Assembly (NCBI RefSeq): GCF_011386835.1
Contig: NC_088810.1
Span: 24,180,001 to 24,244,000 of the forward strand
DNA length: 64,000 nt
DNA from: Chrysemys picta bellii
Lineage: Eukaryota
Direction of reading: 5' to 3'
This document shows positions 41,519-52,420 of this stretch, one piece after another. Under the pieces are notes generated by a model. It worked only from the letters and a program-made list of their open reading frames with translations. It was not told the origin of the DNA and ran no database searches. The translations under genes were made by a program, and so were the position numbers. Each line of letters opens with the position of its first letter. Within the stretch, counting starts at the first letter, position 1.

Positions 41519-44500
41519 CTAGACCACGGCGCATTTACTGCTGCTTTTCTTTGGAGAACTTTTCAAGTCCAGGTTCCCTTTGGGGATTTTACCCTGAAAG
41601 AGAGAGTGAGCCAGTCACTGTCGGGTGCCCTTGCAGCCCGGGGTCACTCAGTGGGGGCACTCTCCTCTGAGCCAGGGCGGGCCCCATGCCCCAGGATGGG
41701 CTCCCTATGAGTAGTGTGACTGTGCCAATGCCCCGACAGGGCACTAGGGGGCGCTGTGCTGCTGGGAGTGCGGTCTGGGGTCTGGCTTCGCCACCAGGGG
41801 TCATTAAAGATCCCAAATTACTGCCCTGGCCATGTTCCAATGCAGGGTGTTCCCATCAGCCTTAGATACCGTAGCCTCACCAGCGTCCTGGCCTGGCCTG
41901 CTGTATAGCACGGCAGTGTGATGGTTAAACAGCTTTTGCGCCCCACTCCAGAGGCAGCTGCATCTCAGCACCAGACGAGGGATCCCTGTAGAACCAGTCC
42001 CCATGCCCCACCCCAGAGGTGGCTGCATCTCAGCACCAGACGAGGGATCCCTGTAGAACCAGTCCCCACGCCCCACCCCAGAGGTGGCTGCATCTCAGCA
42101 CCAGACGAGGGATCCCTGTAGAACCAGTCCCCACGCCCCACCCCAGAGGTGGCTGCATCTCAGCCCCAGGGGAGGGAAGTGCTGGAGAAAAGCAAGATCA
42201 TTCACAGGGAAAGGCAGATTCATGCTGCTTTTCTGTCCCCATCTCAACGCCTCCTGCTGGAAGGAGGCCGAGCTGCGCAGGTCACCTCTAACTCAGGGGG
42301 CTCCCTAGCCCGCCTGGACCCCGCATGCTCACCAGTTTCTTGGTGGATTTCAGCAGGATGTCCTGGGCCAGGGTGTTGAAGGCCTGAGGGGAGAGAGGAG
42401 CAGGTTACGGAAGGCCAGCCAGGGACACTGGGGTGGGGGCTGTGAGCTGGCTGGGGGAGGGGACGCTTAGCAGTGGGAAACAAAAGCCTCTGGGTGAATC
42501 TTAGCGTCCCCCTCTCCCCGCTTCCATGGGAGCATATGGGGAGGACCTGCCTGTGGGCCAGAGGTCCCGAGGGTGGGTCTCACAGCTTCACTGGAGCCCC
42601 CCACTCAGTCCATTCCAGGGATGGGCAAGAGATCTGCCTGGGGTCCTCCTACAGCCCAGATACTGAGAGAGACCTCTCTTCCCTCCCCAGGGGCACTGCA
42701 CCACCCACCACCCAGCCCCTGGCAGCAGCCCTCCTGGGCCGGCCTGGGGGCTGCTTCTCCCAGGCTGCCCCTAGGCAGTGAGCGCCCAGTGCAGGGGGCT
42801 GGAGGCACAACGGGGCAGGGCCCAGGGACCTCGGGGAGTCGTCCCCTGGGAGGGAGCCAGGTCCCACTCCGCTTACCTCCTCCACATTCACACTGGACTT
42901 GGCACTGGTCTCAAAGAACCGGATCCCATGTTCCTTTGCGAGCTGCCAGGAGAGAAAGGGACCTTTGAGCCAGGCACCCACAGCCCCCCCGACCTCCTTC
43001 CCTCTCGCTAATGGCCGAGACCCAGCACAGCTGCCCCTCCATCCCGGGGAGACACAATCACGGCCTCAGAGACACCCCAGGACGGGGGTGAGATGGGAGG
43101 AGCAAGGCCTGGCCCTTGGGACTCTGCTGCATTCAGCACCGCTGGGGGCTGCCACCCTGTGCCCAGCTGTCCCCACCCCCCGATCCAGCCATGAATGACA
43201 GTGGCACTCGTGCCACCGACCTGAGGTCCCCTCCCGCCCCCCCGTACCTTCTCTGCACTCTCCCGCTGCACCTTGCGCTTGGTCTCCATGTCACACTTGT
43301 TCCCCAGGAGGAGGCGCTCCACCCCCGCAGAAGCGTTCTGGAGGAGAGAGCAGATCTGGGGGAGATCAACCCCTGGGCCCCGAGCCCACCATCCATCCCC
43401 CCTCTGAGTCCCCCTTCAGCCATCCTCCAGGTACCCCCACCCCTCCCTCACATCCCCAACCGGCCCCCAGTCCTGCATTCGCCACGGTCACAACTCTGCC
43501 GGCGCCCCTTGCTCCTGACCCGCAGCCCCCATCCGCCAGCGCCCCTCACTCCCGACCCGCAGCCCCCATCCGCCAGCGCCCCTCACTCCCGACCCGCAGC
43601 CCCCTGCCCCCATCCGCCTCCGCCGGCGCCCCTCACTCCCGACCCGCAGCCCCCTGCCCCCATCCGCCTCCGCCAGCGCCCCTCACTCCCGACCCGCAGC
43701 CCCCTGCCGCCATCCGCCTCCGCCGGCGCCCCTCACTCCCGACCCGCAGCCCCCATCCGCCTCCGCCAGCGCCCCTCACTCCCGACCCGCAGCCCCCTGC
43801 CCCCATCCGCCTCCGCCGGCGCCCCTCACTCCCGACCCGCAGCCCCCTGCCCCCATCCGCCTCCGCCTCCGCCCCTCACTCCCGACCCGCAGCCCCCTGC
43901 CCCCATCCGCCTCCGCCCCTCACTCCCGACCCGCAGCCCCCTACCCCCATCCGCCTCCGCCGGCGCCCCTCACTCCCGACCCGCAGCCCCCTACCCCCAT
44001 CCGCCTCCGCCGGCGCCCCTCACTCCCGACCCGCAGCCCCCTGCCCCCATCCGCCTCCGCCCCTCACTCCCGACCCGCAGCCCCCTACCCCCATCCGCCT
44101 CCGCCGGCGCCCCTCACTCCCGACCCGCAGCCCCCTACCCCCATCCGCCTCCGCCGGCGCCCCTCACTCCCGACCCGCAGCCCCCTGCCCCCATCCGCCT
44201 CCGCCCCTCACTCCCGACCCGCAGCCCCCTGCCCCCATCCGCCTCCGCCGGCGCCCCTCACTCCCGACCCGCAGCCCCCTGCCCCCATCCGCCTCCACCG
44301 GCGCCCCTCACTCCCGACCCGCAGCCCCCTGCCCCCATCCACCTCCGCCGGCGCCCCTCACTCCCGACCCGCAGCCCCCTGCCCCCATCCGCCTCCGCCC
44401 CTCACTCCCGACCCGCAGCCCCCATCCGCCTCCGCCCCTCACTCCCGACCCGCAGCCCCCTGCCCCCATCCACCTCCGCCCCTCACTCCCGACCCGCAGC

Positions 44501-47500
44501 CCCCTGCCCCCATCCGCCTCCGCCGGCGCCCCTCACTCCCGACCCGCAGCCCCCTACCCCCATCCGCCTCCGCCGGCGCCCCTCACTCCCGACCCGCAGC
44601 CCCCTGCCCCCATCCGCCTCCGCCCCTCACTCCCGACCCGCAGCCCCCATCCGCCTCCGCCCCTCACTCCCGACCCGCAGCCCACTGCCCCCATCCACCT
44701 CCGCCCCTCACTCCCGACCCGCAGCCCCCTGCTAGCCCAGCCTTGAACAACTTGTAACCCCACATAACACCTCATGTGGGTGGTGACCAGACCATGGCCC
44801 TGGCACAGCCCCCCCCCCCCCCCCCCCCCGCACCTCCTTGATGCTCTTCATCCAGTTCTGGATGTTCTCGAAGGATTTCTCATCCGTGATGTCGTAGACG
44901 AGGATGATTCCCTGGAAGAGACGCTCGCTCAGTGGGGCTGGACCCGGGCTCTAGGCCCCTGCTAGCCTGGCCCTCAGCAGTGCCCAGAAGCCCCCCAATG
45001 GTTAATGGAGCAGCTTGGACCGAGCACCTCCCACCCCCGTCGCCTGGCAGGGGCCCGGGCCCCAGATCCTCCGGATGGCCCACCAGAGTCCCAGGCTAGC
45101 CCCACTCCCTCCAGTGGGGCCCACTGAGATAGAGGCACTGCCCTACTCCCAGCTGCACTGTCGGGGGGGGGACATGGGCTTCTCTGAGCCCCCACATTCC
45201 CCTCCCTGCTTGGCAGGTGCCTGCTGCCAGGAGCACTGCGCCAGACTCCCCTTCCTGGGGCTTCTGGGCCCTATTCCCAGCTCGGCCACGGGGGTGCCCT
45301 GGCAAGGCTGGGCCCAGCGCCGTACCATGGCTCCTCGGTAATACGCCGTCGTGATGGTTTTAAACCTCTCCTGTCCTGCCGTGTCCCTGCGAGAGAGGAG
45401 GGGAAAGGGGGTCACTGGGGTCAGCAGCGTCTCCAACCCCAAGGGCTGCCCTGGGATCCATGGGGGGAGTGGGGGGATTCCTGGGGCAACCACCCTGCCC
45501 TGGGGGACCCTGGTTCTGCCTCCACGGCTGACCCAGCCTCGGCCCCCCTGCCCAGGAGGACGACAGGCGCTGGTTGCTGCTCCGTGGGGTGGGGGCGGAC
45601 TGGCGACCCGCAGCAGGGCACAGCCGCCATCCATGGGGCTGCCAGGCCCTGAACCGGCAGCCCAGTGCGGGCAGGCTCCGGATCCCCCCTTCCCAGCCCC
45701 GGGGCCATGGCAGTACCCCCCAGCCCGCCCCTGGCCCTGCAGGTGCTAGGCAGGGCTCTAGCTGTGGTGCGGCTGGAGACGGGGGCTGGGGGTAGCTTTG
45801 CTGGGGACGGGGTCCCACTTACCAGACCTGGAGTTTGATCTTTTTCCCCTCAATTTCCACTGTCCGGATTTTGAAGTCGATCCCTGGAACACAAGACGGT
45901 TGACGCCATCAGAGCCGCAAGGGGAGGGTCCAGGGGCCCCGGCACGACCCCCACCCCGGGGCCAGGCCAACAGCAGCGCTGGCCTGGGGTGACTGGACTC
46001 ACACCTGCCCCCAGCACAGGCTGTGTTGGGGTGGGGTGGGGGGCGGGGATGGGCCAGCCTGGGGCTGTATTCCCACTCTCCTGTCCTGCAATATTCACCC
46101 TTCCCCCAAACCCAATCCAGCCCCCAGCCCCCCCCCCCGCACATCTCCGGTCTCCCAGCAACAACCTGACGCCCCAGGGAGCAAAGTCCAAGGCGGGTGC
46201 CCCCCCGCAGTGAATAAACAGGCTGCAAGCGGGTGGGAGCGCAGAGCCCTTGGTCTCCCGCAGCAGCCGCTCAGGCGGACGGGCCGAGGATTCCTGAGCC
46301 TGGCATCACGCCCACACCCCCCACTGTCCCGCTATTGTCTGGCTGGCTGCACATGGCGGCGGGGTGGGGGGAGCCAGACAGACGGAGCCCCCCCAGCCTG
46401 TCCCTGCCCAGACCCTCCCTGCCAGGGACGCTGCATGTTGGGTAGGGGGGCCGCCCTCGCGGGGGGCAGGTTCCTGCCCCGTTTCCCAGGGCGGGCAGAG
46501 GAATGACGCAGCCCCGACCCCACTCTCAGCCTGGCACCAGGGACCCCACATGCAGCATCCCTGGTGCCCCCCCCCCCGCCCCAGCACCATGGAGCAGGCT
46601 GCAGCCCCTCGCAGGCTCAGGACGGGGGCAGCTCCAAGCAGCCCCCCAGGGGAGGAGATTTGTGGTCAGTGGGGTTCGGAGTTTCCAATGGAGATTAAAG
46701 ATTGCAGCCCCCGCCCCCCAATGACTTCCAGCCCCACTGCCCCGCCCCTCTCCAGCCCTGCTCCCAGGCATCACCCCCGGACCCCCGGCACACGAGGTGC
46801 ATTTGGAGCTGTCTCCCAGGGCACGGAGCTGGGCTGGAGCCAGTCGGGGGCAGTCCTGCCTGAGCAGCTCTGTGGGGCTGGCAGCAAGAGGGCCCCCTTG
46901 CAGATGGAGACGCCCCAGAACCACAGCGGGCAGAGATCCGGGTAGTCCTACATGGAGTGAGGCTGATCTACACGACCTGGCCCTCAGACCCTAGTGACGG
47001 GGGGCCCGGGGAGGGGTCTGTGGAGCCAGGGCTGCCCTGGCAGCCAGAAACAGACCAACCGGGGGCTCTTGAAGCCCTCGGGAGATGGGGCCAAGGGTTT
47101 GGCTCTGTCCCTGCAACTCCCATGGGAAGCCCCGGCAGCCCAGGCCGGCTGCACCCTCCCGCCTGCCCCCGGAAGCTCTTGCCATGCGGGGGTTTGCAGA
47201 CCTCGCCGCTCACGGCCAGGAGGCAGAATGTGACCGGCCCAGAGGCCTGGCTATAGTTCGGGGTCCCCACCCGCCGGCCCGGCCTGCACAGGCAGGACAA
47301 GTGGCTGCGAAGCGGAGCTGGGAACAGAGGCCTCGGGGGTGGGAGGGGACTTCCTGCCAGCAGCTGGGGCACATCCCCACCGACCCACTGGGACTGGGGC
47401 GAGCTGGAGCAGTGGAATTCCCCGCCGGGCGCCCCGAGCGCAGGAGCCTGTGTGTGAGGCACACGGATGCGTCAGGCTGTTTACGGCTCTATAAGCACCG

Positions 47501-50500
47501 CGGGGCTGGCGCCCTCACTTGCCTGAGGCCCAGGAAATTGTTTCACCATCTCAGGGGCAACTCCCCGGCTTGGGACGGGAGCTGCCAGCTCCGCAGGGGG
47601 GGACCTGCAGCCCCAGCGACGCTGCCCCCAGCCCGCACAGCCCCTTGGCTGGGGCCAAAGCCTCTGCCCGAGGATCACTAACGCTCTCGCCCTCAGGGGC
47701 CAGAGCTGGCCCCAGGTCTGATGGAGATGCCGGGTACGGTGCCCCCCCAGGCTCTGGGCTCTGCACACACTCACCCAGCCCTGGGGGGCAGGGGAGCACT
47801 CACAGGGACTTGCCCAAGGCAGCCCAGCAGGTCACGTGACAGAGGCACAGCAAGAACCCAGGCGTCCTGGACACCACTGGGTGACCTGCCCCCACCCGCA
47901 TCCCCAGCCAGCCCTCCCGCCCCCTCCCCATCTGACCCATGGGGGAGGAACGAGCCTTCCATGCCTGGTGACAAAGCAACCAGACTGACTCCCTGAGTGG
48001 AGTCGCCTGCATCATGGGGCGCAGGGTCTGGGGCAGTGCCCTCCACGGGGGCAGGGCACACGCATGTACACGCACACACACAAGCCTGTGCCTTGGGACG
48101 CAGGGTCCGGGACAGTGCCCTCCACGGGGGCAGGGCACACGCACGAACACACACACACACGCCTGTGCCTTGGGGCTCAGGGTCCAGGGCACTGCTCTCC
48201 ACGGGGGCAGGGCACACGCATGTACACACACACACGCCTGTGCCAAGTGCTCAGAGGTGCAGGGGGCAGGGCACTAGTGAACAGGATGCCTGCGAGCAGT
48301 GCGGGGGGGAGGCAAAGCTCACTAGTGAGTGTGCCTCAGTCCCCATTAACCACTGAACCAGGCCTGGGCCATCCCAGGGGCTCTGAGCGCCGACCGAGCA
48401 CCCTGTCAAGTGAATACCCAGGAGGAGGCGCCGCCGCCCCCCCCCCCGGCCTCGCCTGCCCACCCCTTGCTGCTCTGTACGCAGAGCTGCCTGGGGCTGG
48501 GCAGAGACCAGACCGATGGACAGACGGGGGGTTCTCCAGCAGGATCAGGGGGTCCAGGTTGGCATTCGATCCGAGGACCAACTGCTCTCCGGGCGTCCAC
48601 AGGAACCAGGCGCCTCACGATCATCAGTGGCTTTGCGGGGCATGACTCTGCCAGCGCAGGAGAACAGGGCCGTATGGAACAAGACATCGTCCTGTTGGCC
48701 GTGGGTGGTGCCTGCCCATAATACACCCCAAACCGCTGCCATGGGGGACCCAGCTGCTCGGTTCAGACTGTGGCTGGCCCAGGCAGGGCCCAGCTCGCAC
48801 TCTGTCTCTGCAGCACCTGGCCCCACAGTCAAAATACCCCAAGCACCACAACCAGCGTTTCCCGGGACGCCTGGCAGAGGGGCAGCACCGCACGACCCCT
48901 GACCTGGCCCGTGGGCACTGGGGATTTGTAGGGGGCAATTCTTTAACTCCAGGGGAAAACATGAATTTAAAGCAAGAAGAAATGGAGTTTGCTGCTACAC
49001 AAACGAGCCAGAAACTACCTAGAAATAGCGACCCCGAACAGAAAACAGGAAGAGTGCCGGCCGTGCACGCTCCCCGTGTCCGCGTGTCTGTCTGTACCTG
49101 GGCCGTGCGGGACTGGCCCACGTCCGCATGTCTGTCTGTACCTGGGCCGTGCGGGACTGGCCCGCGTCCGCGTGTCTGTCTGTACCTGGGCCGTGCGGGG
49201 CTGGCCCGCGTCCGCGTGTCTGTCTGTACCTGGGCCGTGCGGGGCTGGCCCGCGTCCGCGTGTCTGTCTGTCCCTGGGCCGTGCGGGGCTGGCCCGCGTC
49301 CGCGTGTCTGTCTGTCCCTGGGCCGTGCGGGGCTGGCCCGCGTCCGCGTGTCTGTCTGTCCCTGGGCCGTGCGGGGCTGGCCCGCGTCCGCGTGTCTGTC
49401 TGTCCCTGGGCCGTGCGGGGCTGGCCCGCGTCCGCGTGTCTGTCTGTCCCTGGGCCGTGCGGGGCTGGCCCGCGTCCGCGTGTCTGTCTGTCCCTGGGCC
49501 GTGCGGGACTGGCCCGCGTCCGCGTGTCTGTCTGTACCTGGGCCGTGCGGGACTGGCCCGCGTGTCTGTCTGTACCTGGGCCGTGCGGGACTGGCCCGCG
49601 TCCGCGTGTCTGTCTGTACCTGGGCCGTGCGGGGCTGGCCCGCGTCCGCGTGTCTGTCTGTACCTGGGCCGTGCGGGGCTGGCCCGTGTCCGCGTGTCTG
49701 TCTGGGTTTCGTGGGGGACCGGGGGGGCACTCACCCATGGTGGAGATGTAGGTGCTGGTGAAGTTGGGGGTTCCCGGGGGGGTTCCCCAGGCAGAGGGGC
49801 CGGGGAGGTTTCGGGGGGAGTCCGGGGGGGCACTCACCGATGGTGGAGATGTAGGTGCTGGTGAAGTTGGGGGTTCCCGGGGGGTTCTCCAGGCAGAGGG
49901 GCCGGGGAGGTTCGGGGGACCCGGGGGGGCACTCACCGATGGTGGAGATGTAGGTGCTGGTGAAGTTGGGGGTTCCCGGGGGGTTCCCCAGGCAGAGGGG
50001 CCGGGGAGGGGCCGGGGGGGCACTCACCGATGGTGGAGATGTAGGTGCTGGTGAAGTTGGGGGTTCCCGGAGGGGTTCCCCAGGCAGAGGGGCTGGGGGG
50101 GCACTCACCGATGGTGGAGATGTAGGTGCTGGTGAAGTTGGGGGTTCCCGGGGGGTTCTCCAGGCAGAGGGGCCGGGGGGTTTCGGGGGACCCGGGGGGG
50201 CACTCACCGATGGTGGAGATGTAGGTGCTGGTGAAGTTGGGGGTTCCCGGGGGGTTCCCCAGGCAGAGGGGCCGGGGAGGGTCCGGGGGGGCACTCACCG
50301 ATGGTGGAGATGTAGGTGCTGGTGAAGTTGGGGGTTCCCGGAGGGGTTCCCCAGGCAGAGGGGCTGGGGGGGCACTCACCGATGGTGGAGATGTAGGTGC
50401 TGGTGAAGTTGGGGGTTCCCGGGGGGTTCTCCAGGCAGAGGGGCCGGGGGGTTTCGGGGGACCCGGGGGGGCACTCACCGATGGTGGAGATGTAGGTGCT

Positions 50501-51340
50501 GGTGAAGTTGGGGGTTCCCGGAGGGGTTCCCCAGGCAGAGGGGCTGGGGGGGCACTCACCGATGGTGGAGATGTAGGTGCTGGTGAAGTTGGGGGTTCCC
50601 GGGGGGGTTGCCCAGGCAGAGGGGCTGGGGGGTTTCGGGGGGGGCCGGGGGGGCACTCACCGATGGTGGAGATGTAGGTGCTGGTGAAGTTGGGGGTTCC
50701 CGGGGGGGTTCCCCAGGCAGAGGGGCCGGGGGGGGTCCGGGGGGGGCACTCACCGATGGTGGAGATGTAGGTGCTGGTGAAGTTGGGGGTTCCCGGAGGG
50801 GTTCCCCAGGCAGAGGGGCTGGGGGGGCACTCACCGATGGTGGAGATGTAGGTGCTGGTGAAGTTGGGGGTTCCCGGGGGGTTCCCCAGGCAGAGGGACC
50901 GGGGGAGGTTTCGGGGGGCCCGGGGGGGCACTCACCGATGGTGGAGATGTAGGTGCTGGTGAAGTTGGGGGTTCCCGGGGGGTTCCCCAGGCAGAGGGGC
51001 CGGGGAGGTTTCGGGGGGGCACTCACCGAAGGTGGAGATGTAGGTGCTGGTGAAGTTAGGGGTTCCCAGGGATTCCCCAGGCAGAGGGGCCGGGGAGGTT
51101 TCGGGGGGCCCGGGGGGGCACTCACCGATGGTGGAGATGTAGGTGCTGGTGAAGTTGGGGGTTCCCGGGGGGTTCCCCAGGCAGAGGGGCCGGGGGGGTT
51201 CCGGGGGGGCACTCACCGATGGTGGAGATGTAGGTGCTGGTGAAGTTGTCCTCGGCGAAGCGGATGATCAGGCAGGTCTTGCCCACCCCGCTGTCCCCGA
51301 TCAGCAGCAGTTTGAAGAGGTGATCGTAGGACTTGGCCAT
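41519..51340 (-). CDS. RAB13: Ras-related protein Rab-13, 201 aa; complement(join(41519..41593,42333..42383,42877..42942,43248..43337,44834..44911,45326..45386,45823..45883,51217..51340))
   Basis: [81 protein letters not shown] and CaaX CAVV. Exon sizes 124/61/61/78/90/66/51/75; synteny between JTB and RPS27. Confidence 0.96.
41739..41757 (+). promoter_or_regulatory. CTCF-like motif in RAB13 intron 7
   Basis: GGGCACTAGGGGGCGCTGT closely matches the CTCF core CCACTAGGGGGCGCT. Confidence 0.5.
41945..42165. repeat. 68-bp tandem repeat x~3.3 (CCCCAGAGGTGGCTGCATCTCAGCACCAGACGAGGGATCCCTGTAGAACCAGT) in RAB13 intron 7
   Basis: Near-identical copies; the core is the reverse complement of the dispersed motif CACTGAAATGCAGCTACCTCTGGGG at ~28320. 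Confidence 0.9.
43495..44735. repeat. C-rich minisatellite (CCCCTCACTCCCGACCCGCAGCCCCCTGCCCCCATCCGCCTCCG, ~37-50 bp units) filling RAB13 intron 4
   Basis: Tandem array directly visible; source of the 539-aa repetitive ORF. Confidence 0.96.
48020..48270. repeat. ~78-bp tandem repeat x3 (CAGTGCCCTCCACGGGGGCAGGGCACACGCA...) in RAB13 intron 1
   Basis: Copies near 48034, 48113 and 48188. Confidence 0.85.
49076..49704. repeat. 44-bp CpG-rich minisatellite (~14 copies, CTGGGCCGTGCGGGGCTGGCCCGCGTCCGCGTGTCTGTCTGTAC) in RAB13 intron 1
   Basis: 44-nt period (e.g. 49141 and 49185). Confidence 0.96.
49705..51248 (-). repeat. Exon/intron-junction tandem array: 16 extra copies of the RAB13 exon-1 3' end plus 5' splice site
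   Basis: Each 81-103 bp unit reads (- strand) ...CAACTTCACCAGCACCTACATCTCCACCATCG|GTGAGTGCCCCCC. Exon-end G at 51217 (native), 51126, 51027, 50936, 50835, 50754, 50661, 50560, 50479, 50380, 50299, 50208, 50109, 50028, 49937, 49838 and 49735. Confidence 0.97.
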
Positions 51341-51589
51341 GGCCCGGGCCGGGCCGCTCGGCTCCTGGGCAAAACTTTCCTGCAGCCGGGAAGCGCCAAG
51401 GGGCGGTGCCGGCTCCGCCCCCGCCTGCGCCCGGTGGGTGGGGGAAGCCCCGACCCCTCCTCCTGCCGGGCCGGGGAGAACCGGCTCTTGGGCAGGGGGG
51501 GCGGGGAGCCCGGCAGGGAGGGGTTAACCCCGGGGGCTGGCTCCGCTCCAGCACAGGGGTCAATGGTCTCCAATTTGTCTGCAGAAGCC

Positions 51590-52420
51590 CCCAGCTGGGC
51601 TGGCAGGGGTTGCAGGTCGGGAGTGAGGGGCACCGGCTGAACTGGGGTGGGGGGAGCCCAGGGCTGGGGATTGAGGGGCACCGGCAGAGCTGGGGTGGGG
51701 GGAGCCCAGGGTTGGGGATTGAGGGGCACCGGTAGAGCTGGGGAGTGGGGAGCCCAGGGCTGGGGATTGAAGGGCACCGGCAGAGCTGGGGTCGGGGGAG
51801 CCCAGTGTTGGGGATTGAGGGGCACCGGTAGAGCTGGGGAGTGGGGAGCCCAGGGCTGGGGATTGAGGGGCACTGGCAGAGTTGGGGGTGGGGAGCCCAG
51901 GGCTGGGCTAGCAGGGGGCTGGGGATTGAGGGTCACCAGCTGAACTGGGGTGGAGGGAGCCCAGGGCTGGGGATTGAGGGGCACCGGCAGAGCTGGGGTG
52001 GAGGGAGCCCAGGGCTGGGGATTGAGGGGCACCGGCAGAGCTGGGGTGGGAGGAGCCCAGGGCTGGGGATTGAGGGGCACCGGCAGAGCTGGGGTGGGGG
52101 GAGCCCAGGGCTGGGGAGTGAGGGGCACCGGCAGAGCTGGGGTGGGGGGAGCCCAGGGCTGGGGAGTGAGGGGCACCGGCAGAGCTGGGGAGGGGGGAGC
52201 CCAGGGCTGGGGAGTGAGGGGCACCGGCAGAGCTGGGGAGGGGGGAGCCCAGGGCTGGGGAGTGAGGGGCACCGGCAGAGCTGGGGGTGGGGGGAGCCCA
52301 GGGCTGGGGAGTGAGGGGCACTGGCAGAGCTGGGGAGTGGGGAGCCCAGGGCTGGGCTAGCAGGGGGCTGGGGATTGAGGGGCGCCAGCAGAGCTGGAGG
52401 GGAGACCCCAGGGCTGGGCT
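51590..52420. repeat. 48-bp G-rich minisatellite (GGGAGCCCAGGGCTGGGGATTGAGGGGCACCGGCAGAGCTGGGGTG) just upstream of RAB13
   Basis: 48-nt period (51961, 52009, 52057); related to the intron-4 array. Confidence 0.93.

What the first reader, a model, noticed from the sequence alone, without database searches (positions are those of the whole stretch)
49705..51248. RAB13 exon-1 splice donor amplified 16 times: a tandem array of competing 5' splice sites
Seen: right after the native exon-1 donor (51217) come 16 units of 81-103 bp. Each rebuilds the last 32 nt of exon 1 (coding [10 protein letters not shown], the switch-I/effector segment) followed by the same G|GTGAGT donor; two units have point variants in the exon-like part. 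In this allele the first unit is 91 nt. Splicing at donor 51126 therefore shifts frame to a stop in exon 2 (45850). Every more distal donor includes the in-frame TGA at 51122-51124. All 16 extra donors thus predict premature-stop (NMD) transcripts. Inference: the array may act as a copy-number-dependent control on RAB13 output through donor competition plus NMD, or as a promoter-proximal U1 snRNP landing pad. The 81-, 93- and 99-nt units keep frame without stops (e.g. [27 protein letters not shown]). An allele starting with such a unit could encode a Rab with duplicated switch-I motifs. Established precedent: the human CBS 31-bp exon/intron-boundary VNTR also duplicates a donor.
Basis: partly seen in the sequence, partly recalled or inferred. 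Interest (0 to 1): 0.9.

Follow-up and report, generated by a model that had tools for sequence, protein, structure and literature searches.

The report
Splice-donor minisatellite in turtle RAB13
Intron 1 of the painted turtle's RAB13 gene starts with a real tandem repeat that copies the end of exon 1 and its splice donor 16 times. This kind of repeat is already known from human genes and is probably tolerated rather than regulatory, but here it is old and occurs, with 6 to 90 copies, in every hard-shelled turtle genome examined.

Summary
RAB13 lies on the minus strand of this Chrysemys picta bellii window. Its native exon-1 donor (51217) is followed by 16 units of 81-103 bp. Each unit rebuilds the last 32 nt of exon 1 plus G|GTGAGT, and every extra donor in this allele predicts a premature stop.

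The regulatory reading (donor competition plus NMD, or a U1 landing pad) is not supported.
- The structure is a known kind: a minisatellite whose first monomer spans an exon-intron boundary. Human examples are F7, CBS, IFI6, LMNB2 and PDGF. In those genes the most upstream donor is used and the copies are silent or nearly so.
- RefSeq models, a spliced RNA contig from Mauremys reevesii and a protein search all show only the native junction.

New here:
- Ten hard-shelled turtle assemblies from four families carry the array, with 6-90 copies.
- Carettochelys keeps only decayed relics, and a gharial has none.
- The 35-nt core around the donor has not changed anywhere, while the spacers evolve in concert within each species.
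- One sea-turtle array tolerates 13 dead donors out of 38.
- Ordinary neighbouring minisatellites persist just as long.

My explanation is neutral unequal exchange, with the selected native junction acting as a template that cannot be lost. Interest is moderate.

The parts
51217..51378 (-). RAB13 exon 1. ATG at 51340; the last exon base, G, at 51217. The 5' end near 51378 is inferred from where the Mauremys reevesii RNA contig begins.
   Evidence: The translation MAKSYD...STIG is 100% identical to turtle RAB13.
51209..51219 (-). Native 5' splice site, TCG|GTGAGTGC. This is the donor used in the annotated mRNA.
   Evidence: An exon model using this donor reproduces P0296 exactly.
49705..51216 (-). 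The 16 extra units (81-103 nt). Each is a C/G-rich spacer followed by the 32-nt exon-1 tail and a G|GTGAGT donor. The last nine units form three blocks of 99+81+91 nt (271 bp).
51217..51248 (-). The 32-nt exon-1 tail (codes [10 protein letters not shown] plus the first base of the Gly codon). It is the left part of the first monomer and the template that the units copy.
49073..49704 (-). An adjoining, unrelated 44-bp minisatellite (14.5 copies) that directly abuts the last donor unit.
   Evidence: It has 55 copies in Malaclemys.
45823..45883 (-). RAB13 exon 2, the acceptor that all 17 donors would join. It holds the TGA reached after the +1 frameshift.
41519..45386 (-). RAB13 coding exons 3-8: 45386-45326, 44911-44834, 43337-43248, 42942-42877, 42383-42333, 41593-41519.

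Best explanation
This is a minisatellite whose first monomer spans the exon 1 / intron 1 boundary of RAB13, so the exon tail and its 5' splice site are repeated inside intron 1.

Origin and upkeep. It arose once, before the hard-shelled turtle families diverged, and probably before Trionychia split off. Since then unequal exchange has expanded, contracted and homogenised it, as with the ordinary minisatellites around it. The native junction cannot be lost or changed because it is under selection: it codes for protein and it is the working donor. Exchange between that junction and the copies therefore keeps refreshing the 3' part of each copy's core. That explains why the 35 nt from -27 to +8 stay identical everywhere while the spacers and the 5' edge drift.

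Splicing. The machinery uses the most upstream, cap-proximal donor, and the extra donors are silent or nearly so. The array is therefore tolerated rather than regulatory.

Shown: the structure, its age, concerted evolution, and use of the native junction in the dominant mRNA. Inferred: the neutrality, the template mechanism, and the rule that selects the upstream donor (taken from the human F7 experiments).
For: Structure and frames.

Same array in ten durocryptodiran assemblies, counted with the anchor: Chrysemys 16, Malaclemys 9, Mauremys mutica 36, M. reevesii 20, Gopherus flavomarginatus 90, and five sea-turtle assemblies with 33, 17, 6, 38 and 10. The left breakpoint is the same in all.

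Age: decayed units at the far end of the array are orthologous between Malaclemys and sea turtles. Carettochelys keeps 81-88% identical relics with dead donors. The gharial has no array.

Concerted evolution: spacer identity is 0.66-0.95 within an array and 0.44-0.69 between families.

Core conservation: the consensus from -27 to +8 is identical in all arrays. Flanking sequence differs by 10-13% between families, so roughly ten neutral changes would be expected over the tree. That figure is my own rough estimate.

Where the conservation ends: it stops where constraint on the native junction stops (+8). Variants specific to the copies accumulate at the 5' edge: AACCTC in sea turtles, GACTTC in M. 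mutica, a lost A in M. reevesii. Refreshing by crossover inside the core predicts exactly this.

Dead donors spread: 13 of 38 in L012, and the far units of Malaclemys have lost the G at -1.

Neighbouring minisatellites persist across the same families. Tandem arrays cover 11.6% of the window.

Native donor in mRNA. No array-coded protein is on record.

Experimental precedent for exclusive use of the most upstream identical donor: PMC1557585.
Against: No read-level RNA evidence exists for this species. The one read-laying run returned only short contigs and reported no exon 1-exon 2 joint.

In the likely RNA run X2, the bin that holds unit 1 has some depth I could not account for. Minor use of the first extra donor therefore stays open.

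These donors (seven contiguous pairs to U1) are stronger than the F7 sites, and classical in-vitro work favours the donor nearest the acceptor. Silence of 16-90 such sites is therefore not guaranteed.

Complete conservation of the core is also what selection on the copies would produce. The template model has not been tested in a species whose native exon tail differs from its copies.
Confidence: 0.72

Rival explanations
1. Unproductive-splicing throttle. Some transcripts use the first extra donors. In this allele they acquire a premature stop and are degraded by NMD, so RAB13 output falls as copy number rises.
For: All 16 extra donors in this allele predict premature stops. In IFI6 and CBS the first two pseudo-donors are in fact used. 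The donors are strong and identical to the native one, and predicted RNA structure does not set the native one apart. NMD would hide such transcripts from contig-level data.
Against: The premature-stop outcome is not conserved. Five extra donors are in frame with no stop in L010 and one in Gopherus. Dead donors spread freely in L012. Copy number runs from 6 to 90 with the same protein and the same annotated mRNA. No array-coded product is on record. The F7 experiments show no competition.
Confidence: 0.15
2. Selected promoter-proximal U1 snRNP platform. The repeated 5' splice sites in the first 1.5-7 kb of the transcript recruit U1. This would raise transcription or suppress premature cleavage and polyadenylation, and the array would be retained for that reason.
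For: The array begins about 160 nt from the transcript start and carries 16-90 consensus donors. The core including the donor is invariant over a tree where about ten neutral changes are expected. From general knowledge, not tested here: promoter-proximal 5' splice sites can stimulate transcription, and U1 suppresses premature polyadenylation.
Against: Conservation extends 27 nt into the exon-like part, which U1 does not need, and it stops where constraint on the native junction stops. A third of the L012 units lack GT. Carettochelys let the array decay and the gharial has none. Ordinary neighbouring arrays persist equally long.
Confidence: 0.08
3. Assembly artefact. The array, or its copy number, is a stutter introduced by the long-read assembler.
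For: Short-read contigs cannot span the array, so the number 16 is unverified. An older RefSeq model for this species lacks exon 1 altogether.
Against: Nine other independent assemblies carry the array with their own species-specific units. The 271-bp higher-order structure and the unit variants are internally consistent. Short-read DNA contigs match 50251-50330 and 50983-51102 without a difference.
Confidence: 0.02

Closest known systems
Human F7 intron 7 37-bp minisatellite (Borensztajn et al. 2006, PMC1557585)
   Same: The first monomer spans the exon-intron boundary. The authentic donor is followed by identical pseudo-donors. Only the most upstream one is used in normal mRNA, and the pseudo-sites are functional when the upstream one is removed.
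   Different: F7 has 5-9 units of 37 bp that copy only 4 exon bases, in an internal intron, with a weak site (TGG|GTGGGT). RAB13 has 16 units here (up to 90 in other turtles) of 53-118 bp that copy 32 exon bases. They sit in the first intron next to the promoter and have a strong GTGAGT site. The RAB13 array is conserved across turtle families.
Human CBS intron 13 31-bp VNTR and IFI6 (6-16) intron 2 minisatellite
   Same: Boundary-spanning minisatellites with 15-25 repeated donors. They show that the first one or two pseudo-donors can be used alongside the authentic one.
   Different: In those genes use of the pseudo-donors has been shown. For RAB13 no such transcript has been seen. Units are shorter in CBS and IFI6.
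Human LMNB2 (100-bp unit, 10-15 copies) and PDGF intron 4 (81-bp unit, 16-18 copies) minisatellites
   Same: Unit length and copy number are very close to the painted-turtle array. Only the authentic donor is reported to be used.
   Different: These lie in internal introns of human genes. The source read here gives no information on deep evolutionary conservation.
Poison exons / regulated unproductive splicing coupled to NMD
   Same: Use of an alternative splice site would introduce a premature stop.
   Different: Such elements are defined by demonstrated, regulated use and by conservation of the stop-introducing event. Here use is not shown, the stop outcome varies between species, and dead donors are tolerated.

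Membership tests
Exon-intron boundary-spanning minisatellite (F7 / CBS / IFI6 / LMNB2 / PDGF type) | Head-to-tail tandem array of units tens of bp long inside an intron | tested here: met
   Tandem Repeats Finder and direct reading: 16 units of 81-103 bp at 49705-51216.
Exon-intron boundary-spanning minisatellite (F7 / CBS / IFI6 / LMNB2 / PDGF type) | The first monomer contains the authentic exon end and 5' splice site, so the donor sequence is repeated | tested here: met
   The 32-nt exon tail plus GTGAGTGC is identical in 14 of the 16 units.
Exon-intron boundary-spanning minisatellite (F7 / CBS / IFI6 / LMNB2 / PDGF type) | Mature mRNA is made from the authentic, most upstream donor | tested here: met
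   The exon model using donor 51217 reproduces RefSeq RAB13 exactly. The M. reevesii RNA contig L008 joins native exon 1 to exon 2. Read-level data for C. picta itself were inconclusive.
Exon-intron boundary-spanning minisatellite (F7 / CBS / IFI6 / LMNB2 / PDGF type) | Variable copy number | tested here: met
   6 to 90 extra units among ten turtle assemblies. Variation within a species was not tested: assemblies that share a protein differ by about 3% in their flanks and are probably different species.
NMD-coupled unproductive splicing (poison splice site) | The alternative site introduces a premature stop | tested here: met
   All 16 extra donors do so in this allele. This does not hold in all turtles.
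NMD-coupled unproductive splicing (poison splice site) | The alternative junction is detectably used and rises when NMD is blocked | not testable with these tools
   Only short contigs were available and no joint was reported. No array-coded protein is on record.
NMD-coupled unproductive splicing (poison splice site) | The stop-introducing event is conserved by selection | tested here: not met
   The frame outcome differs between species. 13 of 38 donors are dead in L012. The array has decayed in Carettochelys.
Promoter-proximal U1 / 5' splice-site enhancer element | A consensus 5' splice-site motif close to the transcription start | tested here: met
   The first extra donor lies about 250 nt from the inferred 5' end.
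Promoter-proximal U1 / 5' splice-site enhancer element | U1 binding, and an effect on transcription or premature polyadenylation | not testable with these tools
   This needs CLIP and reporter assays.

The most novel reading that the evidence does not exclude
The array is kept by selection rather than by neutral turnover. It could be a promoter-proximal bank of U1-binding sites that tunes RAB13 transcription or processing. It could be an NMD throttle. Or it could be a reservoir of gene-conversion templates that protects the native switch-I codons and donor. Together with the other splice-site-multiplying minisatellites noted in this genome, this would point to a turtle-wide use of repeated splice sites as regulatory modules.
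Probability: 0.1. Interest if true: 0.8.

Novelty: new member of a known kind. Interest (0 to 1): 0.45.

Why it matters
Boundary-spanning minisatellites are natural experiments in how the spliceosome chooses among identical 5' splice sites. The turtle RAB13 array is an extreme case. It has up to 90 strong GTGAGT donors, in a first intron, and has been kept since before the turtle families diverged, yet the gene is annotated with a normal product. Comparing species with 6, 16, 36 and 90 copies could test the rule that the most upstream site wins against the rule that the site nearest the acceptor wins, without building constructs.

It also shows how a selected junction can hold a neighbouring repeat constant, through concerted evolution with a unit that cannot be lost.

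On the practical side, such arrays mislead gene predictors and were missing from an older assembly. Unchecked notes from this scan suggest that many more exist in this genome.

Tried and rejected
RNA evidence. The only read-laying run returned Logan contigs. It gave no exon 1-exon 2 joint, and array depth of 2-4 against 251 for exon 1 in one likely RNA run. A small excess in the bin that holds unit 1 could not be interpreted. I draw no conclusion on minor isoforms from it.

Protein searches for read-through or wrongly spliced products found none. This is weak negative evidence only.

RNA folding. Local unpaired probabilities are equally low for the native donor and all 16 copies. Predicted structure therefore does not explain donor choice.

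Longer original duplication. Exon 1 and the spacer share CTGCCTG at the same distance upstream of the tail. The 21 bases between match only at chance level (read directly), so I rejected this idea.

Within-species copy-number polymorphism. Assemblies that share one protein (L009/L010 and L012/L013) differ by 3.1-3.5% in their flanks. They are probably different species, so I dropped the claim.

Failed look-ups. Three protein look-ups for other tortoises and for L. kempii found nothing on record. A fuzzy-regex scan timed out and was replaced by BLAST.

Literature. No paper linking RAB13, turtles and tandem repeats was found.
Full report
**1. The observation**

On the minus strand the window carries a Rab gene. 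Its ATG is at 51340 and exon 1 ends ...ACC ATC G|GTGAGT, with the last exon base at 51217. Sixteen further identical G|GTGAGT donors follow, at 51126, 51027, 50936, 50835, 50754, 50661, 50560, 50479, 50380, 50299, 50208, 50109, 50028, 49937, 49838 and 49735.

The units measure 91, 99, 91, 101, 81, 93, 101, 81, 99, 81, 91, 99, 81, 91, 99 and 103 nt. Each unit is a C/G-rich spacer followed by the last 32 nt of exon 1 and GTGAGTGCCCCCCC. Only unit 2 (two substitutions) and unit 16 (ATCG to ATGG) differ in the exon-like part.

Tandem Repeats Finder also finds a 271-bp higher-order period. It corresponds to the thrice-repeated block 99+81+91 at the far end of the array. This is the signature of block duplication by unequal exchange, not of assembler stutter.

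The frame statements are all correct:
- Donor 51126 adds 91 nt and runs into a TGA in exon 2.
- Every later donor includes the TGA at 51124-51122.
- The 81-nt unit reads [27 protein letters not shown].

**2. Gene and genome**

The window is identical over 15.8 kb to Chrysemys picta bellii assembly GCA_011386835.2, record CM062337.1. The gene is RAB13:
- Exons 1-3 are 100% identical in protein to turtle RAB13.
- JTB lies downstream, and RPS27 lies upstream in the sea-turtle loci.
- An eight-exon model using donor 51217 reproduces the 201-aa RefSeq protein P0296 exactly.

The coding exons are 51340-51217, 45883-45823, 45386-45326, 44911-44834, 43337-43248, 42942-42877, 42383-42333 and 41593-41519. 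The region has 65-72% G+C. Sixteen tandem arrays with periods of 12 bp or more cover 11.6% of the window, and six of them lie in or next to RAB13.

**3. The array in other turtles**

I fetched RAB13 loci through exact protein look-ups. The extra copies were counted with one anchor, TACATCTCCACCATCGGTGAG with up to three substitutions.

| Locus | Genome | Extra copies | Typical unit |
|---|---|---|---|
| window / L001 | Chrysemys picta | 16 | 81-103 bp |
| L005 | Malaclemys terrapin | 9 | about 90 bp |
| L002 | Mauremys mutica | 36 | 78-80 bp |
| L007 | Mauremys reevesii | 20 | 53-72 bp |
| L006 | Gopherus flavomarginatus | 90 | 78 bp (a 7-kb array) |
| L004 | Lepidochelys kempii | 33 | 94/84 bp |
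| L009 | sea turtle | 17 | 67-77 bp |
| L010 | sea turtle | 6 | 78 bp |
| L012 | sea turtle | 38 | 95 bp |
| L013 (= L014) | sea turtle | 10 | 94 bp |

The four last sea-turtle assemblies encode the Chelonia mydas protein (L009, L010) or the Caretta caretta protein (L012, L013). They differ by 2-6% in flanking sequence, so they are probably different species. I therefore claim no within-species polymorphism.

These genomes span Emydidae, Geoemydidae, Testudinidae and Cheloniidae, which are both branches of Durocryptodira. In all of them the exon-like part begins at the same point: a C run followed by AACTTCACC.

Three further observations date the array.
- At its far end, Malaclemys and the sea turtles share orthologous decayed units. 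One is AACGTTACC...CCCCCATTGGTGAAT, identical over 37 of 37 bases, inside an alignable flank of about 230 nt. At least a few units therefore existed in their common ancestor.
- Carettochelys insculpta (Trionychia) has no active array. It keeps relics 88% and 81% identical to the core, with dead donors (ACTGAGT, AGGAGTG). The relics retain the ancestral AACTTCAC, although that species' own exon now reads AGCTTCGCC. The origin therefore probably predates the split between Trionychia and Durocryptodira.
- A gharial has a 1.2-kb intron 1 with no copies.

**4. How the array evolves**

Spacers are homogenised within each genome: mean pairwise identity is 0.66-0.95. Between families they fall to 0.44-0.69. 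Close relatives are intermediate, with Chrysemys-Malaclemys at 0.78 and Lepidochelys versus the Caretta-type assemblies at 0.88-0.89. This is concerted evolution.

The consensus of positions -27 to +8 around the donor, in contrast, is identical in all ten arrays, which hold 275 copies in total. Non-repeat intron and flank sequence differs by 10-13% between families. My rough estimate of about 0.3 substitutions per site over the whole tree predicts about ten changes in 35 nt. None is seen.

Two features argue that this reflects constraint on the native junction and not on the copies.
- The conserved block ends exactly where constraint on the native junction ends (+6 to +8).
- Variants specific to the copies reach high frequency only at the 5' edge of the exon-like part: AACCTC in sea turtles, GACTTC and CACTAGC in M. 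mutica, and loss of the first A in M. reevesii.

Unequal crossover inside the core between the native junction and a copy carries the native 3' part of the core, plus the first spacer, into the array. The 5' part is not replaced. The native unit cannot be lost, so over time it re-seeds the array. This template mechanism is my inference.

Three further results fit neutrality.
- A donor-killing change (G|GT to G|GG) has spread to 13 of 38 units in L012.
- The far units of Malaclemys have lost the G at -1.
- The ordinary minisatellites at this locus are shared across the same families with equally variable copy numbers, and the intron-4 array is even present in Carettochelys. They are the 50-bp array in intron 4, the 48-bp array upstream, the 77-bp array in intron 1 and the 65-bp array in intron 7.

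Long persistence is thus a property of this locus and not of the donor array.

**5. Which donor is used**

RefSeq models for C. picta, M. mutica and L. kempii join STIG directly to IDFK. A Logan contig, L008 from run SRR27880525, is spliced across all eight exons and must therefore derive from RNA. It is 100% identical to M. reevesii exon 1, including 130 nt upstream of the repeated tail, and continues straight into exon 2. That species has 20 extra donors.

No protein on record contains array-coded peptide. I searched with the painted-turtle read-through frame and with a 207-residue open frame through a sea-turtle array.

The single read-laying run gave only short contigs. In one likely RNA run, exon 1 has depth 251, while the array bins have 2-4, like the rest of intron 1. 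No joint was listed, and a small excess in the bin holding unit 1 cannot be interpreted. The dominant mRNA therefore uses the native donor. Minor use of the first copies remains untested.

Predicted local RNA structure does not distinguish the native donor from the copies.

**6. What is already known**

Borensztajn et al. 2006 (PMC1557585) describe this class: minisatellites whose first monomer spans an exon-intron boundary. Their list:
- F7 intron 7: 37 bp, 5-9 units.
- IFI6: 25 pseudo-sites, of which the first two are used.
- CBS intron 13: 15-20 units, with two pseudo-sites used.
- LMNB2: 100 bp, 10-15 units, only the authentic site used.
- PDGF intron 4: 81 bp, 16-18 units, only the authentic site used.

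[quoted passage not shown] The turtle RAB13 array is a new member of this class.

It differs in several ways. It lies in the first intron next to the promoter. Its donor is strong, with seven contiguous pairs to U1 (from general knowledge). It reaches 90 copies in other turtles. It has demonstrable deep ancestry. I found no paper on it.

**7.

The premature-stop prediction holds for this allele but is not a conserved property. In L010 five extra donors stay in frame with no stop, and in Gopherus the first one does. Taken with the dead donors, the decay in Carettochelys and the F7 precedent, a selected throttle or U1 platform is possible but unsupported. I give these about 0.15 and 0.08.

Unchecked first-stage notes from this scan list similar donor- or acceptor-multiplying minisatellites in other genes of this genome: RBM14, CFB, RNF214, AQP14, RNF40 and PPP6R1. 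If real, they point to a general mutational tendency of this repeat-rich genome rather than a RAB13-specific device.

**8. Verdict**

- It is a new member of a known kind.
- Interest is moderate, as a conserved natural test system for 5' splice-site choice and for concerted evolution anchored on a selected unit.

Noticed in passing
window 49073-49704: A 44-bp minisatellite (14.5 copies, 96% matches) directly abuts the last donor unit. Malaclemys has 55 copies at the same place. Sea turtles have a single copy, and Mauremys and Gopherus have none.
   Followed up: partly
window 43569-44732 (RAB13 intron 4): A 50-bp minisatellite (about 25 copies) begins about 100 nt after exon 4. It is present with 4-25 copies in nine of the ten hard-shelled turtle loci (none detected in Lepidochelys kempii) and with 2 copies in Carettochelys. 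Its gene-sense unit contains GGGAGTGAGGGG, which resembles the exon-4 donor region GAG|GTGAGGGG.
   Followed up: partly
window 51619-52356: A 48-bp G-rich minisatellite sits just upstream of the RAB13 promoter and is shared across turtle families with 1-21 copies. Its unit also contains GGAGTGAGGGGC, so it may belong to the same dispersed family as the intron-4 array, in the opposite orientation.
   Followed up: partly
window 43338-43355: An alternative acceptor 18 nt upstream of exon 5 adds ICSLLQ. This gives the 207-aa RefSeq isoform X1 in both Chrysemys and Mauremys mutica.
   Followed up: partly
protein P0234 (XP_023964305.1): An older painted-turtle RAB13 model lacks exon 1 and starts with an unrelated 64-residue N-terminus. 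This suggests the GC-rich exon 1 and array region was missing or unresolved in the earlier assembly.
   Followed up: no
L003:3125-3380 (Carettochelys intron 1): The spacer motif alone (CCTGGGGACCCC... GGCAACCCCCC) has become a short-period repeat with no exon-like core. The native exon tail has changed to code RSFAGTY, while the relic copies keep the ancestral AACTTCAC.
   Followed up: partly
window 49705-51248, + strand: The strand used as template for RAB13 carries four to six runs of G4-G7 per unit, and GC skew is +0.39 over 50001-52000. This suggests strong G-quadruplex potential, which may contribute to the array's instability.
   Followed up: no
same genome, other windows (first-stage notes): Unchecked notes report further minisatellites that multiply a splice donor (RBM14 intron 1, about 25 copies; CFB exon 8, 14 copies; RNF214; an exon-16 VNTR; five cases in four neighbouring genes). 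Others multiply a splice acceptor (AQP14, RNF40, PPP6R1).
   Followed up: no
L008:1-22: The Logan RNA contig begins with 22 nt of sequencing adaptor before the RAB13 5' UTR.
   Followed up: no
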